Source: Tetramitus jugosus
Taxonomy: Eukaryota > Protista > Heterolobosea
Direction of reading: 5' to 3'
Length of the DNA stretch: 64,000 nucleotides
Assembly: GCA_937625935.1 (NCBI GenBank)
Contig: OW569366.1
Location: forward strand, 310,001-374,000
The position numbers were made by a program, and so were the translations under genes. The notes under the pieces were generated by a model that saw nothing but the letters and a program-made list of their open reading frames with translations, was not told where the DNA came from and made no database searches. How positions within the stretch are numbered: the first letter of the stretch is position 1; every line of letters starts with the position of its first letter. Of this stretch, positions 25,766 to 44,467 are shown piece by piece.

Positions 25766-28700
25766 ATGAGTAATCCTCATCATCATCGTCGTGACAGCAG
25801 TGACGACATTGAGGATCATGGTACCACTCAAGCTGAAGTGAATTATGAGATTTTGAGTTTTGGTGATGACAATATTGCTGCTGCTGCTGCTGCAATGGAA
25901 AAAACTTCTCCTGCTTCTCCTCTGAGCAGCAACAATAACAAGAAGAAAAAAAAGAAGAAGCAAATTCATGTTGTTGCACCAGCAGATCATCATCAGAGCA
26001 ACACATCAAAGAACATTTCATATCTGAATGTGGATGGCAATAACAATAACAATATGACAACAACAGATGACATGTCTCAGACATCATTCACAACTGATAT
26101 GACCGATGATGATTCATCACCTGATATTCAATTTGATTTCGATATCATTAGTACAGTGGGAGGAGTGATTTTGGAATTGGTTACATTTGCATTGGTTTTG
26201 TACTATAATGCCTCTTTGCTTGCAGGTGTGTATTCATGCCATGTTTCTTGATTGAATATGTTGTTTGGGCAACAATTGTTGCGATTGATCATAACATGTT
26301 ATGGATGACTAATCATATGAATTTTTTTCTAAAATCTTTCATCATACCAGGTGGATTGATGCGAGATAATTTTGCTTCTCTGTTTTATTTGTTGCTCTTT
26401 CTGATGAATTTGGCCTTCCCGAGCTATTATCCATACTATCCAATCACAACAGTCAATCGAATCCTGTTCCTGACACCAAGAGTTTTAACCTATGTTTCCA
26501 CTACTATTTATTCTGCCTTGTTCCTCATTACACACATTTCGTTGCAAATTGTGTTCAAGACCAAGGGTTCATCGTTTCATCCACCTCACTGGTTGGAAAA
26601 ATTGGGATTTGTCAAGTATGTTGTTGTGGCGTTGTGTTACATGTGATTTTGCTCTTGTACAAAACTGTTGACTGACTCAAATGGTTGTAGTTTGCTAGGA
26701 AAAAAGTTTTCTGTTGTGATTATTCACATTTTGCCTGATATTACAGTGTTTATCTCTGGTATATTGATCAGTATATTTTTACCTATACTGTGGAGAGCTC
26801 GAGTGCAAATGGAAAAGTCATACTTTGAAATGTTGATAGAGAAGAGTCAACAGAGCGCACCAGCTGATACATCCATGTCAGTCAACAGTTCCTCTGATGA
26901 GAGTGGGCACACATCATCAAATTATCAACAGAACGCAGCGCAAGCTGCAGAGGAGTCCAATGAGCATAACAATCAGGCTTATCCGACAGAGAAACCGATA
27001 TTGATTGCGCCTGATTTGAAACCGAGATCCACTCCGAACATATTTATATTGAAGGAGCTATTGTATGTGCTGTTGCTCATGTTGACAGCCTCCATGTATC
27101 CGAGTTTGACGTCTGCTCCCTATTTGGTACTGTTCTTTGTCTTCGCAATAGTTTACACAACGAAGATCAAGGTGTCCTATCATATTTATTGCTTGGTCAT
27201 GTGTATTTCAAATTTGTACACGGGTGCTCTTATTCTTCTATTCGCGTTGTCGAGATATCCTGGTATTTTGAATACTCAATATTCGACAAAGTTTGGAATG
27301 ATGTTTGGCTTCACTGATTTGTCTGCCTTTCATAGGGACAACTGGCCTGTCTACACGCTATATTCTTTGCTGATATTTTTCTATCTTGTGGTAAGTGATA
27401 ATGCTCTTTTCTTAGTTTGGAAACAATTACTCATGACTGACACGCTTAATTGCAGACTGCCAGCATTATCAATCAATATATTTGTAGGTACATTGAGTTT
27501 CGCAATTATATTGCCCAACTCTCTACGATTAAGCTTGCAGAATTTTATCAGACCATTGCATCTTCTTCAACTTCCACTCGAGAGGTATTCCGAAGATTGT
27601 TGCAAGATTTCCTTTCCAAGTTCGTGTTAGGCTTGCTGCTCATTTCTCTGACTGTTACTGCTTTAAGTGTACCAAGTTTAATGGCAATGCCTTACTTACT
27701 TCTAGTCTTTCTGGGATTATTAGTGGCAACTGATGTCTATGCATATACGCTGCCAGTTGCTTTTGCATACTCAATTTTGAATGTTACGGCACAATTCGCG
27801 TTCAACATACCATCTGTAACTCAAAACTTTATTTATCCAACTAGAGGAATCTTGGAAAAGGTCGGTTTCAGAAACGAGAAGTATCCTAGTCCGATAATCT
27901 TTGGCCAATTGATGCTCACTTTGTTGATTGGGTTGACAATTCGAGTCCAACTCAAGAATCGCAATACTTTATCAAAAATTAGTCAAACCTTATTTGGGGA
28001 GAACAACAATTTAATATCCGAACTGAACTCTGATGAGTATTCATACGATAGTGAGGCAACTGAGAATATTGACAACGAAGATGATGATCCAGAGATTGAA
28101 GAATTAACCGAAATGGATGTGAAAAAGAAAGAGCGTAAAAAGAGACCAAAAACATTTAGGGCATGGGTAAAACTATCTCTGAGAACTGTGCAACAGATAT
28201 GGCAGAAGATGGTAGAGGTTTCAATCAAGTTCTTCACAACATACTCGTATTATTTATCACTACTGGTGGTCTATTTTGCGGATTTGAGCACAGAGAATGC
28301 TGATACCATCCACGTCGTGTATCTATTATTCTTCTTGCTCTTCTTCGTATTCAAGTCCTTGGCCAAGAAACTTTGGATTCTATTAGTCTTCTATGCTCAG
28401 TTTGTGATCATCGCTCTGTACTTCTTCAATGTGTTCTATCCACATATTGTCGGAACACCCTACAATATTTTAGGTCTAGTGAGATTCAGAAAGCAATCAT
28501 TTTGGTTAGGCTTGATATGGCACATTCTCATTTTGTTCTTTACTTCTATCGAGTATCATGTGCAGAATATGACCGAATTTGCCGGTATAAAAATGGAGAA
28601 GGATTATGTGATCCAATTACCAAAGGTAGTGGATGTGGTATTCAAGGGTTTCCAGCAGCTTTCAAAGGTATTTGGCCTATATTTAACATATATAGCAATC

Positions 28701-31700
28701 ATATTACTTTTGCTGTTGTCTCGGGAATCTTCACTCTTTGGAATAGTGTATGTATAGTACAATATTTTGTGTTCCATTGAGGATAGGGTAACTAAGTTTT
28801 TATTTTTCAGGTTCTTCATGATCTTGTTCGGCTGTTTTATTTTGCAAACGTACAAGGTGACAAGAGTACTCTTGTATCCCTTCTGGTACGTTTTGGTGTC
28901 GTACAGTGGATTAGTATTCTTTGCAGTGTACGTTTATCAATTCCCAGATGTTCGATCAGCAATCGTGCAAGCATTGGACAATGTTCCTCCATCGAGACGA
29001 CTCTTTATGGATGTAAATTCGATCGGTTTGGTTACTTTTGAGTACAAATCTGTCAGTTTGCTACCATATACAATCGTTCTACTACTGTCTATATTCCAGT
29101 TGAAGAATTTCCAATATTTCAAACTTCCTTCAAAGAAAGAAAACAATAATACAAACGAGGAACATAAGAGTATAATGTCCGAACTGGCAAATTCAACTCG
29201 ATTTGAAGTGATATTCTCAGCAACTGTTGACGACATATTGGTAGATTTATCTCGATTTTTGAAGCGATTGGCGATTATTCATCAACCAAAGATTCTATTT
29301 ATCTTCTTGTTTGTGGCTGCACAACTGAACGAAACCATGATCGGATTGGTCTATTTTATCATCGTGATATTGTTGGCACCCGTGCCTAACATCGCGAGCC
29401 GCTTATGGTTATTTATCTATGTGTACGCATCAGCTGTATTCCTTGGTCAATACGCGTACCAATTCCCATATTTCATCGATGGTATGAGATGTAATCTTGA
29501 ACCGAGAAATCCAAATGAGCCAAATCCTCATACAGAGGGACCTCACGCTGCTTGTGCTTGGTTCAAATTTGGAGGTTTGAAACTATCGAAAGGGAAGTTT
29601 ATTGGTGATATTCTGTGGGTGCACTGTCTTGTCATGATAGCCGCTCTCTTCCAGAAAAAGTGCTTCCAATGGTTCGATGATCTCACTGCAAGAAATCTCT
29701 ATACTCCAGGTCGCTTGTTTGAGGAGTTTTCAGATGAAGAGCGTGATCAACAGATCGAAGACGCCAAAAAATCAGAGATGCTGAAGATGTTCCCAAAGGG
29801 TGTTCGTATATTCATTACACAGATGTGGTTGGATAGTGTTGATGCCTTAAGATATGCATGTAACCGTTTGTTTGAAGACTTTGGTTATGAGGTTTGCATG
29901 CTTGTGCTATTGATTGGTAGTTTATTAATGATTCAAAGTTTCTGGGGTCTCTTGTACTTGGTATTATTTGGTTTGTGCTTCTTCGCGGGCGAAAAACGAA
30001 TGTCTAAGGTGTGGGTTATTCTGATAGCATTCATGGAGTTGAATATGATTGTACTCTATTTCTTTAAGCTCGAAAAGTTCCCTCTATTTGATCTATACTC
30101 CTGGCTAACAAAGTGGAAAGGATCGATTATGTTTCGCTATGTGATATTGCGTCCTCAAGATTTCGCTGGTGGCACATATGCAGAAGACTTCATCATTTCT
30201 GTATTATACTCAATTTTGTTCTTCATGGCTCTCCAAACAAGGGTTTATCTGAACAAGAGTGAAGCAGCTCGTATATTGTTCCAACGAGAAACTTTCGAAC
30301 CAACAGTTCATATTGGTGCAATGCCAGAAGCAGTTACTAGCAAAACACCGGCCTCTGTCATTTTGTACAAGAGGCAACAAGAAGACAAGAAACTTCACGT
30401 AGAATGTCCTATCATTGGTGCCAAAGGAAGAAGAGACTTCACTGAATCAAGAAAGAGGAGGAATTGGATCGATTGGTTAAGATTGATGGTTGTTTTCCGA
30501 GGATTTCCTTTACTCGTCCTCGTTGTTGTTTTTATAGACGCAACATTGTCTCCTTCATTCCTAAAGCTGATTCAAATGACAATATGCTTGTTCTATTTGA
30601 ACTCGTTGGAACAACTAAGATGGAAATCAAAAAGATATTGGAGATGGTTGGGAATTTTCTATTACTGTGTCTTAATCCTTCAAGCACTATTCCAAATTCC
30701 ACTTGTACTTATTGGTGATCCTACAACCTGGACTCCATCTGGCGAAGAAACGAAAGGATCTCAATGGGCCTCTAGAATCATGAATACTGTCGGACTCAGA
30801 GAGGGGTCCATCAAGACATTAAGTCTATCGATCGTAGTTCTTGCACTGTTCTACATTCAAAGCAAGATATTTGATCTCAATCCTGATTATTTGTTCTTCC
30901 TTAATTTCCTTGTGAGACAAAGAAAGAGAAGGAAGAAGTTACGAACAAGAAATAAGACGTTTAGAGCCGCTCAAATCTTCAGAAGATATCTCGAAATTAC
31001 ATTCAATCAAAAAAGAAGAGAAAAGAACATGGAGGCAATCAAAGAGTACGAACGAATTAACAGTCGATCTATCAGCCAACTTGAACAAGAAAGCAAAATC
31101 CAAAGAAATGAGGATTGGCCAAATGATCCGAAGATCATTAAGGAGTATTTACTTAGGGATCACTTCATTAGTATTCATAGATCCTGTTCTGAGGATGGAA
31201 CTTTGAGCAACAAGAGTGAGCATGATGTGTTTAGAATCGCATTTGAAAATATTCGAAACTCGAAGAGTCTTCAAGATGATATTATCGAACGAGTGGACTT
31301 ATCTCGAATGGAAGAATTATACACCTCGTCCAAGAAACAACTAGAACGTCAACAACGAGTAGAAACAATGAGCAAAAAGAGATCAAAGTCTAACGCCGAA
31401 GAAAAGAACTCGAAGCGATCAGTGAAGATTAGTAGTGATGTACAAGAAATACCTGCCGAAACCAGAGTTATTCTCGGACCCCAAGATGCTGATTACTCTC
31501 CACAAAAGGAAGTGCAAGGAGAAGAAGAATCTCCAAAGTCTTCATTTAAGACTAAAATTGTGGATGTTCTAAAACTTGTTTGGAAATTACTGCGCGGTTA
31601 TATTATCCAAGCTGTTGATATAATCGTTGGATATGTGAGTCCTTTTATTAACATTGCCTATGGCAATGAAGACACCATTGTTGAACTGTTGACTGGTAGT

Positions 31701-34259
31701 ATGACTGTCAGCGATCAAAAGAGTTTATTGGAGAACCGCGAAGCAGAGGAGAAATACTTTAAGAATCTTTTATCTGTTCCCTCTCCACAACAAAAGAACA
31801 CTGATAACATTCAGATGGATGAGCTAGCAAAACCAGAACCATCCTCTCAACCTGTTCCCGATCCATATGCTGATGTTAATGTTCTCTTCAAACTCAGAGA
31901 GCTCAAAACGACGATTGTGCATCTATATTTGAGTAACACAGATCTCATTGTGTATGCAGCTATGGTTCTGAACGTTGTGTCCTCTCCAACTATCTACAAT
32001 GTGATCTTGACAATTAGTGCCTTCATTTATGCCGCTATGCAATATCCTTTCCCACCAAGGCGGTACTGGCTATCAATTCTCGCAATGTCCCAGGCATTGA
32101 TTGCTTTGGAGTATATATTTTATCTGATTCAGGACGGTTTTCCAAACTTGAAAGAAAAAAACCAGTACAGTCCATCAGAGATAATTGGATGGAAGCCAAG
32201 GTCGAATTTGTTTAGAGTGATTGGTGCATATCTTGTTGTGATATTTGCTGTTCTACAACACAGAGACACTTTGAAGAAACGAGGAGACTGGTACTACGCT
32301 GAGGAAAGTAAGAAGAAAGCACTCAAGAAACAACAACGAGAAGAAGCAATCAAGAGGGCGAATGAACAAAATAATGATGAGCCCCAAGACAGACGTCGAT
32401 CCACTTCGTTCAAGAATGAATCTGCTCCGGTAAACATCATCGTTGATGCTGTTGATGGAGAAGTTCAAAGTGTAACAAGTAGGATCACATGGATTCAGAA
32501 TATTTGGGGACAAGTCACTTCTTACTTCAGGAATCTGACAAACGAGAATGGAAAACTTGGAAAGGACTACTTTGTTTTGATGATTGCGTTCCAACTGCTC
32601 GCATTCCTTTTGTTCTTTGTCACTTTCTCATATCTCAGTGGACGAACATCAACTGACATTACTGGTGCCATTCAGTCTAACCAACTCTCGGGCGTCTTCG
32701 TATTTGTACTCTTCCTATTTTTCGTGGAGATTTGCATTGAAAGAATTATCTACCTCTATGCCAAGATCTGGATCAAGTTGGTCTTTCACTTCCTATTGGT
32801 TATCGTCTATCATGTCGTATTCCTTTACATGAATCATTATGTGCTAGTGAGAGGCAACACCAAGGGATCCTACCTATTGAATGTCTTGTATGTAATCAAA
32901 TGCATCTATCTGGCCATTTCATGTGTTCAGATTAGAAGCGGATATCCAACGACTGGTATCTATTCCAGCTACTTTGCAAAGAGCTACTTCTGGCTTCAGA
33001 GTTACATTTATCTGTGTTGGAGAGCAATTCCATTCGTCTTTGAACTCAAGACCTTATTGGATTGGACATTCATTCGTACGACTCTAAACTACAATGAATG
33101 GATGAAGATGGAAGATGTGTACTCCGAACTGTACAACAGAAAGTGTGACTTGGAGTACAGGAAAATATTGGGCAGGAACTATGGTCAGGGACAATTCTGG
33201 ACAAGAAAACTCACCGCAGGTTTCCTAATCTTTGTGGTCATGTGTTTCTTGGTCTTCTTCCCCCTTGCATTCTACTCCACTGCAAATCCAAACTTCATTT
33301 ACAATTCCGTCTTCCTGGTCAGCTCCACGGTAGGAGTCACCGGCTTCCAAGATTTTTACGAGAATCAAATCTATTTTGCCAATCCAAAGGATAACACAAA
33401 AGATTTCTATGACAAGTTTGGTATTTATGCCAAGAATGACTCGTTACGTCAATTGGATCCTGGATCTCCAGTGCAGACATTCTCTCTGTCAACATGGTCA
33501 GAAGTGTACTGGATTATTAGTACTCCATCAAAGGGTGCACTCTCTACTGCATTGCTCAGCTCCACTCGCAAAATGAACCTTACATTGTCGTTTGAGATTG
33601 AGAGAACTGGTCCATCTACGGCTAAGGTACTCAAGGGACAGCAAGATATTCCACTATCTCGTGATCAACGTGAGCATCTTGCACAAATTGTTCAAACAAT
33701 GGACAACTCGACAATCACCGTACCGGATCTCGTTCTTCCTCAAGCATATAATCCATTCCTTATGAACAAGTATGACTCGTTGAGCGAAGCATCAGTTCCA
33801 TCATATTTTAAACCAAATTGTACGATTGGTATTCGAAGTTCTCCGGATAAGTTCTACTATTGGATGATGAGTTGTAATCAGATCAACTTTAGTGGTTCAA
33901 ATTCGAAGCAAAATTATACAGGACCCTACTTCCTCATTCAGTCCACGATGATTGTTAACGGCGAACAATTCTATCTGACCAAGTTTATATCTGGATTTGG
34001 TATTATTGCCTTCTACACAACATTTGTTCTGGCAGTTGGTCAATTCTTGAGAATGAATGTCAGTGGGCTCGTTTCTCGTCTGTTCTTTACAGATGTGGAT
34101 AATGTTGACTTACTTTTGTCCTTTGTGAAGGATATTTACGTTGCTAGAGAAAATGGAGCACTCGACTTGGAGGAAACCATGTACGTTCAGCTCATGCGTA
34201 TCTTCCGAGACACCTCGCTCTTGCAAGTCTGGACGAATATCAACAGGTCAACACTGTAA
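25766..34259 (+). CDS. PIEZO: Piezo mechanosensitive ion channel, about 2,721 aa; introns 26226-26350, 26616-26690, 27391-27455, 28748-28810
   Basis: Many TM helices; PFEW signature AIPFVFELKTLLDW..TTL...EWMKMEDVY; KLTAG..LVFFPL; inner helix GIIAFYTTFVLAVGQFLR; DIYVAREN..LEE. Exon lengths sum to 8166 nt, an open frame. Confidence 0.95.
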
Positions 34260-41450: not shown

Positions 41451-41934
41451 AATGAGCGTCTGGTTTGTCCAAGCTGTCAATTGCAAGTTACCATCCCCCA
41501 CAAAAAATGTTGGAAGTTTCAGGAGAACCATATTGGTCGGGAGTAGAAATCTTTTGACACAAACAAGTACTTCTCGTTCTTCTTCCATACTCAGAGCAAG
41601 ATTGAGAGGACATCCAGCAATTAATCAGATGGCCAACTTTCATCTTCCAGTCAGACCAAGTCTTCTGTCGTTGCTCGAGTCTGGTTGAGCGGGTGTGAGT
41701 TTTTTAGTCAGGGTGCATTCCAATATCACCCCCCACATCGAAGACTTGCGGTCTGGTTCAAAGGGCGCCATGGATTCTATGTTTCTTTATTGTGGGTAGT
41801 TCTTAGATCAGGGTATGAAAGTGGCTGAATAGCCTTTTTCTTCTTGAGTCGAGGCCTGTGTTTCGTATTGTTTAGAGCGATGGATTGCAATGAATCGTGA
41901 AAGAATTCCGAACAATTAGTACCGTACAAAATCA

Positions 41935-42130
41935 CATATCAAGTGTGAATGCCAGACAAATGAGAAAATGCCTTGTTTGCATTTTTTCATACTTAGTGTG
42001 TGGATGCCTTCCAAGAATTGGAAATGGTCCACCACACTTGTATTATCCAAGTTAACATTGAACAATGTTCCTGGAAAAAGTTTTCATAAGACGTCTATTT
42101 CTTCCACAATCAGATCCCTGCAAGATAAAC
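41935..42130 (-). pseudogene. Decayed GIHTL-type LRR gene fragment
   Basis: Minus-strand translation DVL*KLFPGTLFNVNLDNTSVVDHFQFLEGIHTLSMKKCKQ, then a frameshift, then AFSHLSGIHTLDM*. Same repeat family as 43608-44042. Confidence 0.65.
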
Positions 42131-42459
42131 CTGGGAAAGTACAATGTCAGCAAAGACGCATCGAAGCAATAAACTGATCAACACCAAAAGAAAATTCATA
42201 TGCCATGATTAACTTACACAAAAGCCGATGCCAAAAGCCCAATCTAAGGTCTCTTTCCTCGGCATTCAGTAGGTAGTTTTTTGAGAGAAGTACAAAACAA
42301 ATCTAAGATCCCAAGACACCAAGACTACGAACTGGTTTACACCCTTAAGAAGGACCCCACACTCTCGCGGAACTTCATCCTTGTCAGAACTTGAAAGAAC
42401 AAAAAGTAATTGTTGACACTAAACCATTTCTTGTCAAACTTGCCAGAAACAAACAAAAA

Positions 42460-42578
42460 GCCTACATTACTGAGGGTTCTCGAGTAGTCTCCTATCTCAA
42501 TACTAACTCAGCCAGATGGCGCTTAACTTCTCTATTCGAAATGGGAAGAGGTGGTTCCACCATTGTATGAACGTAGAC
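42460..42578 (-). rRNA. 5S rRNA gene (copy 1)
   Basis: 119 nt: GTCTACGTTCATAC...GAAGTTAAGC...GTTAGTA...GGAGAC...GAA...GTAGGC, followed by a T5 Pol III terminator (42455-42459). Helix I ends pair and the conserved 5S motifs are correctly spaced. Confidence 0.92.
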
Positions 42579-42626
42579 ATTAAACATGTTTTTTCACATA
42601 TTTTGGCCGCTTTGAGGTCCCACCGA

Positions 42627-43293
42627 GGGGTGGACTTTAGTTTTCTAAAGTACCCCCACAAGATTGACAGAAAGCTGGAGTGGTTCTATGCACAAGTGCG
42701 CAGTGGTACTATGCACACTCGAGAAGTCATGAGGGTATTGTATGGAAAAAATGAAGCTCCAGCCGTGTGTGAAAGATGTAACAAGGAGTCAGAGACTATT
42801 CTACATTGTCTCATTCGCTGTCCACGAGCCATATTGACTAGAAGAAGACCGGCTATGTCGGTCGGTGATGAACTGAGTGGTCTGGGAGTCCACCCAAAAC
42901 ACAAGATAGACCTATGGTTCGACTCGGTGTGTTGGAAAGGAGGTAAGATGAGTGTGCAACCAAACCGAAAATCGAGCAAAGAGTTCCTCCTAGGTATGAT
43001 GGGTGTAGAGAAGGAAGCAGTGGATCAAATTATGAGAGGGATGAGGAAGAACGGAATCAAGAAAGATATTGCGGAAAAGAGCCAGAACATTTGTGAACAA
43101 AGTGAAAAGGAGGTGCGTCGAAACCCTTCACCAATTGTACACCTCCTATAAGGAAGGAACAAAACAATGATGCCCTACGGGCACCATTGTTAGAATTAAG
43201 AAGTAATGGAGGAGATAACGCTCTTTGAGCGTTATCCATTGTAAATATTCAGATAATAAAACAGAGCAACCAGTTGGTTGTATTAAAAAAAAA
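42627..43293 (+). mobile_element. 5'-truncated non-LTR retrotransposon (LINE 3' end with zf-RVT-like CCHC motif, 3' stem-loops, A9 tail), flanked by a 15-bp TSD
   Basis: ORF remnant RSGTMHT...CERCNKESETILHCLIRC; AATAAA at 43255-43260; A9 at 43285-43293; identical TTGAGGTCCCACCGA at 42612-42626 and 43294-43308. Confidence 0.85.
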
Positions 43294-43607
43294 TTGAGGT
43301 CCCACCGAAATTGAGCTACTTCCGCGTTTTCACCTGCTACATGTAAATAGTGTGAAACGGAGGTGTCTCACGTGAACAGTGTCAGGGGGAGATTCTCAAA
43401 ACTCTCCACCTGTTCGCGACGACGAAGAATAAAGGTAGTCAATAGCATTGCAAGTATAGAATGGTTGCAATTGAGTTACACTTGCAAAGGAATCAATCAA
43501 TTGAAATTCAATCGATGGCTCTATGTCCAACAAGAAGAGAACACTAGAACGAGCTTTGGAAGAGAAAGAAATTGAACACTGGTTTCAATTAGGAAACAGT
43601 TTCTTAC

Positions 43608-44042
43608 TTGTCTGGCATTCATACGCTCTCCATGAGTGGTTGCCACCAAGTCACTGACCATACGTTTTCTCATTTTGCTGGGATACATTCACTCCACATC
43701 GCAGACTGCAAACAAATCACCGATGATGCATTTCCATACTTCTCTGATACTCATAAACTCTCTATGGGTGGTTGTGAGAATATTACAGACAATGCCTTCA
43801 CTTATTTAGCTGGCATTCACACACTCTTTATAGGTCATTGCAAACAAATCACCGATAATGCTTTTACTCATTTGGTTGGTATTCAAACACTTAATATGAG
43901 TTTTTGTACGGGCATCACAGACTTTGCATTTCAGTGTTTGACTGGCGTTCGGACACTTACACTGGATGGATGTGATCAAGAATCCATCCCAGAGAAAGGA
44001 TTCCTTTTCTTGAAGGGTATTCACACACTTCGTTGGGGTTAG
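43608..44042 (+). pseudogene. GIHTL-type leucine-rich repeat fragment (about six 25-aa repeats) lacking an ATG start
   Basis: Repeats L.GIHTL.M..C.QITD.AF..L. Starts at TTG with a broken upstream frame. Confidence 0.7.
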
Positions 44043-44348
44043 GTACGATATCGTAGCCGAAGAGACAATGCCTTTAAAAAGAAGGAGATTGGTTGTTGCG
44101 AGTCCAGTTCGATAGCTCTTTATGGCATGGATGGGGAATGACAGGATAAATACATTATCAGTACAGTAAAAGAGAACCAGCAACAGATCCAATGGCAACT
44201 TGGTCTATATTCGAGGCGAGTGTGCTTGGTTGTGGTACGCTTAATATCAACCTTGTTCAGAACTCAAGTGAGTCTTACTTCTCTCTCCCAATGGGTACTC
44301 AGATCCTAGGATCCTGTTCCCCGGCTAAATCACAAAACAAGGCCAAAA

Positions 44349-44467
44349 GCCTACATTACTGAGGGTTCTCGAGTAGTCTCCTATCTCAATACTAACTCAG
44401 CCAGATGGTGCTTAACTTCTCTATTCGAAATGGGAAGAGGTGGTTCCACCATTGTATGAACGTAGAC
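44349..44467 (-). rRNA. 5S rRNA gene (copy 2)
   Basis: 118/119 identical to copy 1, with a T4 terminator at 44345-44348. Confidence 0.92.

What the first reader, a model, noticed from the sequence alone, without database searches (positions are those of the whole stretch)
42460..43308. Non-LTR retrotransposon inserted head-to-head 48 bp upstream of a 5S rRNA gene: candidate Pol III-gene-targeting LINE family
Seen: a 667-bp element (42627-43293) with a CCHC motif typical of the C-terminus of LINE RT ORFs. It has an A9 tail and a perfect 15-bp TSD, TTGAGGTCCCACCGA (42612-42626 and 43294-43308). It is 5'-truncated, as expected from target-primed reverse transcription. Exactly 48 nt (42579-42626) separate its 5' junction from the first base of the minus-strand 5S gene (42578), and the two are divergent. 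Known: Dictyostelium TRE5 non-LTR elements integrate roughly 45-50 bp upstream of Pol III genes, with their 5' end facing the gene and similar-sized TSDs, via TFIIIB interaction. This is a safe-harbour strategy in compact genomes. Inference: this flagellated, non-dictyostelid, gene-dense protist may carry an independently evolved or related Pol III-tethered retrotransposon. This rests on one insertion only.
Basis: partly seen in the sequence, partly recalled or inferred. Interest (0 to 1): 0.9.

Follow-up and report, generated by a model that had tools for sequence, protein, structure and literature searches.

The report
LINE family targeting 5S/tRNA genes
The 667-bp insert is a truncated copy of a 5.3-kb jumping gene (LINE) whose copies land at one fixed spot and in one direction just upstream of 5S rRNA and tRNA genes. 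This is the 'safe-harbour' habit known from Dictyostelium TRE5 elements, seen here in a protist related to Naegleria.

Summary
A 5S gene lies at 42459-42578(-). The 667-bp insert (42627-43293) has an A9 tail and a perfect 15-bp target-site duplication (TSD), and its 5' end faces the gene 48 nt away.

The insert is the last 13% of a ~5.27-kb non-LTR retrotransposon. ORF1p has tandem RRM-like domains and a coiled coil. ORF2p has an APE endonuclease, a reverse transcriptase (RT) and a CCHC zinc finger.

I examined 29 loci and could resolve 18. All 18 map head-to-head upstream of a Pol III gene. TSDs are 10-20 bp and all differ, with no consensus at the nick.

The gene-proximal TSD edge, where reverse transcription is primed, is fixed:
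- -34 to -37 at 5S genes.
- -37 to -45 (mode -41) at tRNA genes.

Stacks with overlapping TSDs show repeated hits on the same site. At least 10 of 24 sampled 5S genes carry antisense LINE remnants.

In a one-gene tree the host groups with Naegleria, not with dictyostelids. ORF1p and ORF2p have no close named relatives. Descent from TRE5 could not be tested.

The scan has already reported this family on other pieces of this genome. No paper describing it was found.

The parts
42459..42578 (-). 5S rRNA gene, the target. Its +1 is at 42578. A run of 5 T on the minus strand (42455-42459) serves as the Pol III terminator.
   Evidence: RF00001, 99.3 bits, model 1-120. Sequence read. It differs from the majority 5S sequence by one base (42520, table 3).
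42579..42611 (-). 33 nt of native 5S upstream sequence left between the gene and the insertion. It holds the conserved upstream box (gene-sense CGGCCAAAA, -31..-23, at 42601-42609).
   Evidence: Alignment of 24 5S upstream regions anchored at +1. Conserved cGg.gAAA at -31..-24 and AAT at -3..-1.
42612..42626 (.). Gene-proximal copy of the 15-bp target-site duplication (-34..-48 of the 5S gene). Its gene-side edge (42611/42612) is the inferred first nick of target-primed reverse transcription (TPRT).
   Evidence: Exact repeat of 43294-43308.
42627..43293 (+). 5'-truncated LINE copy, 667 bp, equal to the last ~13% of the 5.27-kb element.
   Evidence: At least 53 matches in the own genome: 88-100% identical (subfamily A) and ~73% (subfamily B). 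Aligns to positions ~4591/4599-5259/5267 of full-length copies.
42627..43151 (+). C-terminal remnant of ORF2 (174 codons plus stop), with the CCHC zinc knuckle at 42768-42821.
   Evidence: zf-RVT PF13966, E 1.1e-3. 64-66% identity to residues 1109-1293 of an open ORF2.
43152..43284 (+). 3' untranslated region of the element.
   Evidence: Conserved in all copies that keep the 3' end.
43285..43293 (+). Poly(A) tail of 9 A.
   Evidence: Other copies have tails of 7-24 A.
43294..43308 (.). Distal copy of the 15-bp target-site duplication.
   Evidence: The junction is spanned by a contig of run X1 with no mismatch (record 5).
44348..44467 (-). Second 5S gene with no LINE sequence within 2.5 kb upstream. 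It serves as an unoccupied comparison site.
   Evidence: RF00001, 100.4 bits. No blastn or tblastn hit to the element library.

Best explanation
The insert is a recent, dead-on-arrival (5'-truncated) copy of an APE-type non-LTR retrotransposon family. The family integrates by target-primed reverse transcription at a fixed position and orientation upstream of RNA polymerase III genes.

Shown:
- The element's 5' end always faces the gene.
- The gene-proximal TSD edge is the nick that primes reverse transcription on the poly(A) tail. It lies on the strand that is the sense strand of the Pol III gene. It is fixed at -34..-37 for 5S genes and -37..-45 (mode -41) for tRNA genes.
- The distal edge varies with TSD length (10-20 bp).
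- The target sequence itself is not conserved.

Inferred:
- 5S genes and tRNA genes have different internal promoters. They share TFIIIB and Pol III bound just upstream of the transcription start. The ribonucleoprotein is therefore most likely positioned by a protein contact with TFIIIB or Pol III, as for TRE5-A, and not by DNA sequence.
- The ~6-nt offset between gene classes fits a distance measured from the transcription start, since tRNA genes have a short 5' leader.
- Here the nick fell just outside the conserved 5S upstream box, so the 5S gene probably stays functional.
For: Anatomy
- 5.27-kb copies carry ORF1 (~435 aa) and ORF2 (1293 aa).
- ORF2 domains: Exo_endo_phos at residues 24-220, RVT_1 at 552-770, zf-RVT at 1124-1180. 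No RNase H.
- The ORF2 ATG overlaps the ORF1 stop (ATGTTAA).
- The ORF1p model shows two beta-alpha-beta domains plus a long helix. Its best matches are tandem-RRM proteins.

Targeting
- Aragorn and Rfam place a tRNA or 5S gene on the opposite strand next to the 5' junction in L005, L014, L016, L018, L020, L021, L025, L030, L031, L032, L034, L035 and L038.
- TSD mapping gives the proximal edge at -34, -35 and -36/-37 for 5S genes.
- For tRNA genes the values are -41, -41, -41, -42, -41, -42, -41, -43, -39 and -37.
- The two classes differ (Mann-Whitney p = 0.014).
- No base is conserved within 12 nt either side of the nick.

Repeated hits
- In L036, L037, L038, L040 and L042 a younger element lies between the gene and an older copy of this family.
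- In these stacks the TSDs are overlapping pieces of one original target, at reconstructed -39..-45.

Gene-centred sample
- At least 10 of 24 5S genes have LINE remnants upstream.
- Every ORF2-like hit is antisense with its N-terminal side nearest the gene.

Chance
- Even with 2,400 Pol III genes, a random site falls in a 20-bp oriented window with p of about 1e-3.
- 14 direct cases among 29 loci gives p far below 1e-30.

Related organism
- A metagenome contig only ~80% identical to anything in this genome has the related ORF1 68 nt from an antisense tRNA-Gln.

Known parallel
- TRE5 sits 40-54 bp upstream of tRNA genes and 37-41 bp upstream of 5S genes.
- TRE5 ORF1 protein binds TFIIIB (PMC5911963).
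Against: - 11 of 29 loci could not be resolved. Their 5' ends lie outside the fetched DNA (L002, L003, L023, L033) or the copies are fragmentary.
- Only three 5S insertions of this family have mapped TSDs.
- No protein contact is shown. The one complex prediction gave no verdict.
- No empty-site allele or expression data were obtained.
- None of the five full-length copies inspected has both ORFs open, so current activity is inferred only from 98-99% identical copies with intact TSDs.
Confidence: 0.9

Rival explanations
1. Sequence-specific targeting. The endonuclease recognises a DNA motif that happens to lie upstream of Pol III genes, as Tx1-clade and R-type LINEs recognise sites inside multicopy RNA genes (for example Mutsu in zebrafish 5S genes).
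For: 5S genes here share an upstream box at -31..-23. A weak A/T-rich patch sits near -29..-25 of tRNA genes.
Against: All 13 aligned nick sites differ, and no column reaches 60% within 12 nt either side. TSD sequences are all different. tRNA genes for at least 13 different amino acids, plus 5S genes, are hit.
Confidence: 0.04
2. Random integration followed by selection. Copies insert anywhere in this gene-dense genome and only those in harmless Pol III upstream regions survive.
For: The genome is gene-dense (22 ORFs of 350 aa or more in 64 kb), so selection against genic insertions must be strong.
Against: Selection cannot explain a nick position fixed to about 3 nt, a single orientation in 18 of 18 resolved copies, or re-insertion into the same few bases with overlapping TSDs. 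Other intergenic DNA is not used.
Confidence: 0.03
3. DNA-level duplication. The 5S-plus-element unit spread by segmental duplication, so the association reflects one or a few events.
For: Some 5S upstream regions are near-duplicates of each other (L044 and L054, 93% over 170 bp).
Against: Each copy has its own TSD, its own truncation point (598 bp to 5.27 kb) and its own flanks. The copies sit next to many different tRNA genes. The window's flanks match no other locus.
Confidence: 0.01
4. Question of origin, not of mechanism. The family is a true relative of the dictyostelid TRE5 lineage, by deep common ancestry or horizontal transfer, rather than a convergent invention.
For: Same ORF2 architecture (APE-RT-zinc finger, no RNase H), same two-ORF layout with ORF2 in the -1 frame, same distance and orientation, and the same shorter spacing at 5S genes (PMC5911963).
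Against: Spaller et al. found no TRE-like elements in the other Amoebozoa they checked (Physarum, Acanthamoeba, Protostelium), and Pp_NLTR-B shows this habit can arise independently (PMC5006619). Beyond unnamed fragments, the best ORF2 matches are at most 30% identical. The ten clusters looked up were arthropod, algal or unnamed, none dictyostelid. The ORF1p profile found only three unnamed metagenome proteins. These searches list only top hits, so absence is weak evidence.
Confidence: 0.25

Closest known systems
TRE5 (TRE5-A/B/C) non-LTR retrotransposons of Dictyostelium discoideum and other dictyostelids
   Same: - Two ORFs.
- ORF2 has APE, RT and a zinc finger.
- Oligo(A) tail and variable TSDs.
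- Integration about 50 bp upstream of tRNA genes in the opposite orientation.
- 5S genes are also hit, at a slightly shorter distance.
- Frequent 5' truncation and ORF1-only derivatives (PMC5911963, PMC5006619).
   Different: - The host groups with Naegleria (Discoba), not Amoebozoa.
- No sequence relationship to TRE5 could be shown or excluded.
- The 5' UTR is only about 12 nt, with no counterpart of the TRE5-A A/B modules seen.
- ORF2 has its own ATG overlapping the ORF1 stop.
- ORF1p is predicted as tandem RRM plus coiled coil, whereas TRE5-A ORF1p is described as of unknown function.
Pp_NLTR-B of Polysphondylium pallidum
   Same: A LINE unrelated to TREs that independently sits 39-64 bp upstream of tRNA genes. 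It is the precedent for convergence (PMC5006619, PMC5911963).
   Different: NLTR-B carries an RNase H domain in place of the zinc finger and has three ORFs. The family here has zf-RVT and no RNase H.
Mutsu and other Tx1-clade sequence-specific LINEs (zebrafish 5S rRNA genes)
   Same: LINEs associated with 5S rRNA genes (PMC5340908, title and abstract as listed).
   Different: By my own knowledge of the family, those elements insert at a specific sequence inside the RNA gene. Here the insertion is upstream, leaves the gene intact, has no target consensus and also uses tRNA genes.
Yeast Ty3 and Ty1 LTR retrotransposons
   Same: Pol III-gene safe-harbour targeting through the Pol III machinery: TFIIIB for Ty3 and a Pol III subunit for Ty1 (PMC5911963; PMC7459421, abstract).
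   Different: They integrate by integrase rather than TPRT, at different distances, and Ty1 follows nucleosome periodicity.

Membership tests
TRE5-like (Pol III-upstream, head-to-head) targeting LINEs, as a functional class | Non-LTR retrotransposon with APE endonuclease and RT, a poly(A) tail and variable-length TSDs | tested here: met
   Pfam domains on the 1293-aa ORF2. A tails of 7-24 and TSDs of 10-20 bp.
TRE5-like (Pol III-upstream, head-to-head) targeting LINEs, as a functional class | 5' end about 40-60 bp upstream of the mature tRNA coding sequence | tested here: met
   Element starts 49-61 nt from tRNA +1. The proximal TSD edge is at -37..-43 in 10 direct cases and -39..-45 in 4 reconstructed stacked cases.
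TRE5-like (Pol III-upstream, head-to-head) targeting LINEs, as a functional class | Orientation opposite to the Pol III gene | tested here: met
   18 of 18 resolved copies. All ORF2-like hits upstream of 5S genes are antisense.
TRE5-like (Pol III-upstream, head-to-head) targeting LINEs, as a functional class | Other Pol III genes (5S) are also targeted | tested here: met
   The window copy, L018 and L020. At least 10 of 24 5S genes carry LINE remnants.
TRE5-like (Pol III-upstream, head-to-head) targeting LINEs, as a functional class | No target sequence consensus (position-specific, not sequence-specific) | tested here: met
   Alignment of 13 nick sites shows no conserved column.
TRE5-like (Pol III-upstream, head-to-head) targeting LINEs, as a functional class | Element protein contacts TFIIIB, and targeting depends on TFIIIC/TFIIIB loading | not testable with these tools
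   One complex prediction (host TBP core with the ORF1p N-terminal half) returned no verdict. This needs two-hybrid, pull-down or B-box mutant assays.
TRE clade of dictyostelid LINEs (phylogenetic membership) | RT/ORF2 groups with TRE5/TRE3 in a tree | not tested
The top-hit lists contain no named dictyostelid protein, which is only weak negative evidence.
TRE clade of dictyostelid LINEs (phylogenetic membership) | Host is a dictyostelid | tested here: not met
   The host NSUN2-like protein has its best named hits in Naegleria (36-40%). It is sister to Naegleria (SH-aLRT 96), and Heterostelium falls on the other side of the tree. This rests on one gene and a quick tree.
Sequence-specific 5S-inserting LINEs (Mutsu type) | Insertion at one defined sequence inside the 5S gene | tested here: not met
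   The insertion is 34-48 nt upstream of an intact 120-nt 5S gene. Target sequences differ between copies.

The most novel reading that the evidence does not exclude
The family arose independently of TRE5 in a discoban, and targeting serves expression as well as safety. Full-length copies begin only about 12 nt before the ORF1 start codon, so they carry no room for an upstream promoter. Their 5' ends lie roughly 25-30 bp from the A/T-rich box upstream of the Pol III gene, pointing away from it. That box may be where TFIIIB/TBP binds, though this was not tested. The bound TBP could then act as a divergent promoter that starts transcription exactly at the element's first base. A LINE would thus rebuild its own promoter by choosing its landing site.
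Probability: 0.2. Interest if true: 0.85.

Novelty: new member of a known kind. Interest (0 to 1): 0.7.

Why it matters
LINEs that target the region upstream of Pol III genes have been described only in dictyostelid amoebae (TRE5, NLTR-B). The LTR counterparts are in yeasts and dictyostelids.

A large, recently active family with the same geometry in a relative of Naegleria would be a further, distant case of this solution to living in a gene-dense genome.

It offers a second system for asking how a TPRT machine is positioned by the Pol III apparatus. The nick is fixed to a few bases, and it shifts by about 6 nt between 5S and tRNA genes. That is a concrete handle for the question.

It also matters for annotation of heterolobosean genomes. 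A 2026 survey of their transposable elements does not mention tRNA genes.

Tried and rejected
- Complex prediction, host TBP core (L063 ORF, residues 60-254) with ORF1p residues 1-215: no verdict (score 0.01). This is not evidence either way.
- Read laying on 41800-44300 with the organism's own run and three metagenomes:
  - Only short contigs were available, and no joint 42626>43294 appeared, so there is no empty-site allele.
  - The other joints fall in repeats and I read them as repeat artefacts.
  - No run on record as RNA holds the stretch, so expression is untested.
- A census of all 47 listed 5S genes and of full-length 5' junctions was cut short.
- TRE5/TRE3/NLTR sequences could not be obtained by reference, so no clade tree was built. 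Typing sequences from a paper's supplement was left out on purpose.
- PDB sequence search does not discriminate. R2 proteins and human L1 ORF2p all score around 1e-19.
- ORF1p has no Pfam family, no usable Atlas look-alike and only three unnamed metagenome homologues.
- ENA contig L066 looked like independent support. It is 96-98% identical to this genome, so it comes from the same species or a close strain and was not counted.
- I first read all copies as starting at element base 1, which suggested a SINE-like unit. That was an artefact of the query's own boundary.
- The AAAAACGC motif seen in several TSDs appears to be the 5' end of neighbouring stacked elements, so I did not count it as a target motif.

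Full report
**1. The observation**

The region reads exactly as described.
- Rfam finds two complete 5S rRNA genes on the minus strand, at 42459-42578 and 44348-44467. Aragorn finds no tRNA in the window.
- The first 5S gene is followed by a T5 terminator.
- Upstream of its +1 (42578) lie 33 nt of native sequence. Then comes the 15-mer TTGAGGTCCCACCGA (42612-42626), a 667-bp insert (42627-43293) ending in A9, and the same 15-mer again (43294-43308).
- The insert reads as 174 codons from its first base, with a C-x2-C-x8-H-x4-C motif. Pfam zf-RVT matches weakly.
- A contig from the source organism's own sequencing run crosses the 3' junction without a mismatch.

**2. What the insert is**

The 667 bp has at least 53 matches in the 26.35-Mb genome. 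They form one group at 88-100% identity and another at about 73%.

Comparing the loci with each other shows that many copies run further 5' by different amounts. Five extended loci define a full length of about 5.27 kb.

The anatomy is as follows.
- The 5' UTR is about 12 nt.
- ORF1 is about 435 aa.
- ORF2 is 1293 aa, in the -1 frame. Its ATG overlaps the ORF1 stop as ATGTTAA.
- ORF2 holds an APE endonuclease, an RT and the C-terminal zf-RVT zinc knuckle. There is no RNase H.
- ORF1p has no Pfam family. An AlphaFold model has pLDDT of about 70-90 over most of residues 10-225. It shows two beta-alpha-beta domains and a 40-residue helix, and it matches tandem-RRM proteins such as HuD, Sxl and the SFPQ/NONO group.

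The window copy is the last 13% of the element. It is a true 5' truncation. Its nearest relatives are 98-99% identical and its TSD is perfect, so the insertion is recent.

**3. Is the position next to the 5S gene meaningful?**

Element-centred sample. I examined 29 loci found through the 3' end alone.
- tRNA or 5S genes lie on the opposite strand next to the 5' junction in 14 loci.
- TSDs are 10-20 bp and all different.
- The gene-proximal TSD edge is nearly constant. At 5S genes it is -34 (window), -35 and -36/-37.
- At tRNA genes it is -41 six times, -42 twice, and -43, -39 and -37 once each.
- The 5S and tRNA values differ (p = 0.014).
- The distal edge, and so the distance to the element's first base (48-61 nt), varies with TSD length.
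- No base is conserved around the nick.

Stacks. In five further loci the family's copy lies behind a younger element.
- The junctions show overlapping TSDs cut from one original target.
- In L038, for example, the older TSD of 14 nt is split by a newer insertion that duplicated its last 9 nt.
- The four newly reconstructed stacks (L036, L037, L040, L042) give original sites at -39..-45.
- These are independent hits on the same few bases, which selection after random integration cannot produce.

Unresolved loci. Eleven loci were not resolved, because the 5' end lies outside the fetched DNA or the copy is fragmentary. No resolved copy lies anywhere else.

**4. Gene-centred sample**

The genome has at least 47 dispersed 5S genes. 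For 24 of them I had 2.5 kb of upstream sequence.
- At least 10 carry LINE remnants close upstream.
- Every ORF2-like match is antisense with its N-terminal side nearest the gene.
- Exact TSDs next to T-runs were found at five genes. They lie at -34 and -35 for this family's type of site and at -23 to -26 for other fragments.
- So several related families share the habit with slightly different set points.
- The second 5S gene of the window is empty.

**5. Mechanism**

The geometry is shown directly. By the logic of target-primed reverse transcription, the proximal TSD edge is the priming nick, and it lies on the sense strand of the Pol III gene.

The way the nick is placed is inferred.
- 5S and tRNA genes have different internal control regions. 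They share TFIIIB and Pol III just upstream of the start site.
- A common set point without sequence consensus therefore argues for a protein tether to that complex.
- The 6-nt shift fits a distance counted from the transcription start. tRNA genes here show a conserved ATA(T) at about -7..-5 that may mark it.
- TRE5 shows the same shift: 40-54 bp at tRNA genes against 37-41 bp at 5S genes. Its ORF1 protein binds TBP, Brf1 and Bdp1 (PMC5911963).
- My one complex prediction (TBP core with ORF1p) gave no verdict.
- In the window the nick lies just outside a box conserved upstream of the 5S genes, so the gene's promoter context is probably intact.

**6. Host and relatives**

Host.
- A host NSUN2-like protein from the window has Naegleria as its best named hits (36-40% identity), then a jakobid.
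- In a quick maximum-likelihood tree it is sister to Naegleria (SH-aLRT 96). The dictyostelid sequence falls with opisthokonts.
- This is one gene. It supports 'not a dictyostelid, probably a heterolobosean' but not a genus.

Element proteins.
- An exhaustive HMMER search found a few short unnamed fragments at 39-89% identity to ORF2p. Everything else was at most about 30%.
- The named clusters I looked up were arthropod or algal.
- ORF1p found three unnamed metagenome proteins.

Metagenome contigs.
- One contig is from this species or a close strain.
- The other is only about 80% identical to anything in this genome and shows the related ORF1 68 nt from an antisense tRNA-Gln. The habit therefore extends to at least one related organism.
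- Element sequence also occurs in groundwater and soil metagenomes.

**7. Comparison with what is known, and novelty**
- Spaller et al. 2016 describe TRE5, TRE3, NLTR-A and NLTR-B in dictyostelids. They found no TRE-like elements in Physarum, Acanthamoeba or Protostelium.
- Full-text searches for Naegleria or Heterolobosea together with retrotransposons and tRNA genes found no description of such a family.
- A 2026 preprint surveying transposable elements in heteroloboseans never mentions tRNA.
- The kind of system is known. The lineage and the family are new.
- Whether the family is convergent or related to TRE5 remains open, because no TRE sequence was available for a tree.
- The scan has already reported this family on at least ten other pieces of the same genome. 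This report adds three things: nick-based mapping, the 5S/tRNA offset, and the overlapping-TSD stacks.

**8. Limits**
- The survey is a sample.
- Only three 5S insertions of this family have mapped TSDs.
- There are no expression or polymorphism data.
- No protein contact has been shown.

Noticed in passing
window 42601-42609; L043-L062: 5S genes share an upstream box (gene-sense cGg.gAAA at -31..-24) and AAT at -3..-1. This may be an upstream promoter or TFIIIB element. tRNA genes show only ATA(T) at about -7..-5 and a weak A/T patch near -29..-25.
   Followed up: partly
G000, at least 47 places; L048, L056: 5S rRNA genes are dispersed singly over most contigs rather than in tandem arrays. 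Some form divergent pairs 0.7-1.0 kb apart with LINE fragments between them.
   Followed up: partly
L038, L039, L042, L066; at least 74 matches in G000: A ~1.4-kb poly(A) element carries only an ORF1 homologue (about 30% identical to this family's ORF1p). It is more abundant than the 5.3-kb family, with copies 91-98% alike to contig L066, and it sits closest to the tRNA genes in stacks. It is probably a non-autonomous rider on the same targeting system.
   Followed up: partly
L031-L035, 5' ends: Full-length copies start with a short A-run. ORF1's ATG lies only about 12 nt from the first base, so there is no room for an upstream internal promoter.
   Followed up: no
L065 (ENA ERZ27263115, contig k141_250749): Environmental contig with a related ORF1 (about 80% DNA identity to this genome's copies) 68 nt from an antisense tRNA-Gln. 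This is evidence for the same habit in a related organism.
   Followed up: partly
window 43396-43600 and 43600-44040: Read depth jumps about 100-fold at 43396-43563, and many contigs end at 43458. This marks the start of another multicopy sequence. It is followed by an ORF made of leucine-rich repeats (C..ITD.AF..L.GIH.L).
   Followed up: no
G000 contigs C54 and C56: The two contigs carry tRNA genes at identical coordinates (941, 12773, 14364, 14438, 44585). They are probably the same organelle genome assembled twice.
   Followed up: no
window 27450-34259 (+): A large Piezo-type mechanosensitive channel homologue (Piezo cap, anchor and THU domains).
   Followed up: no
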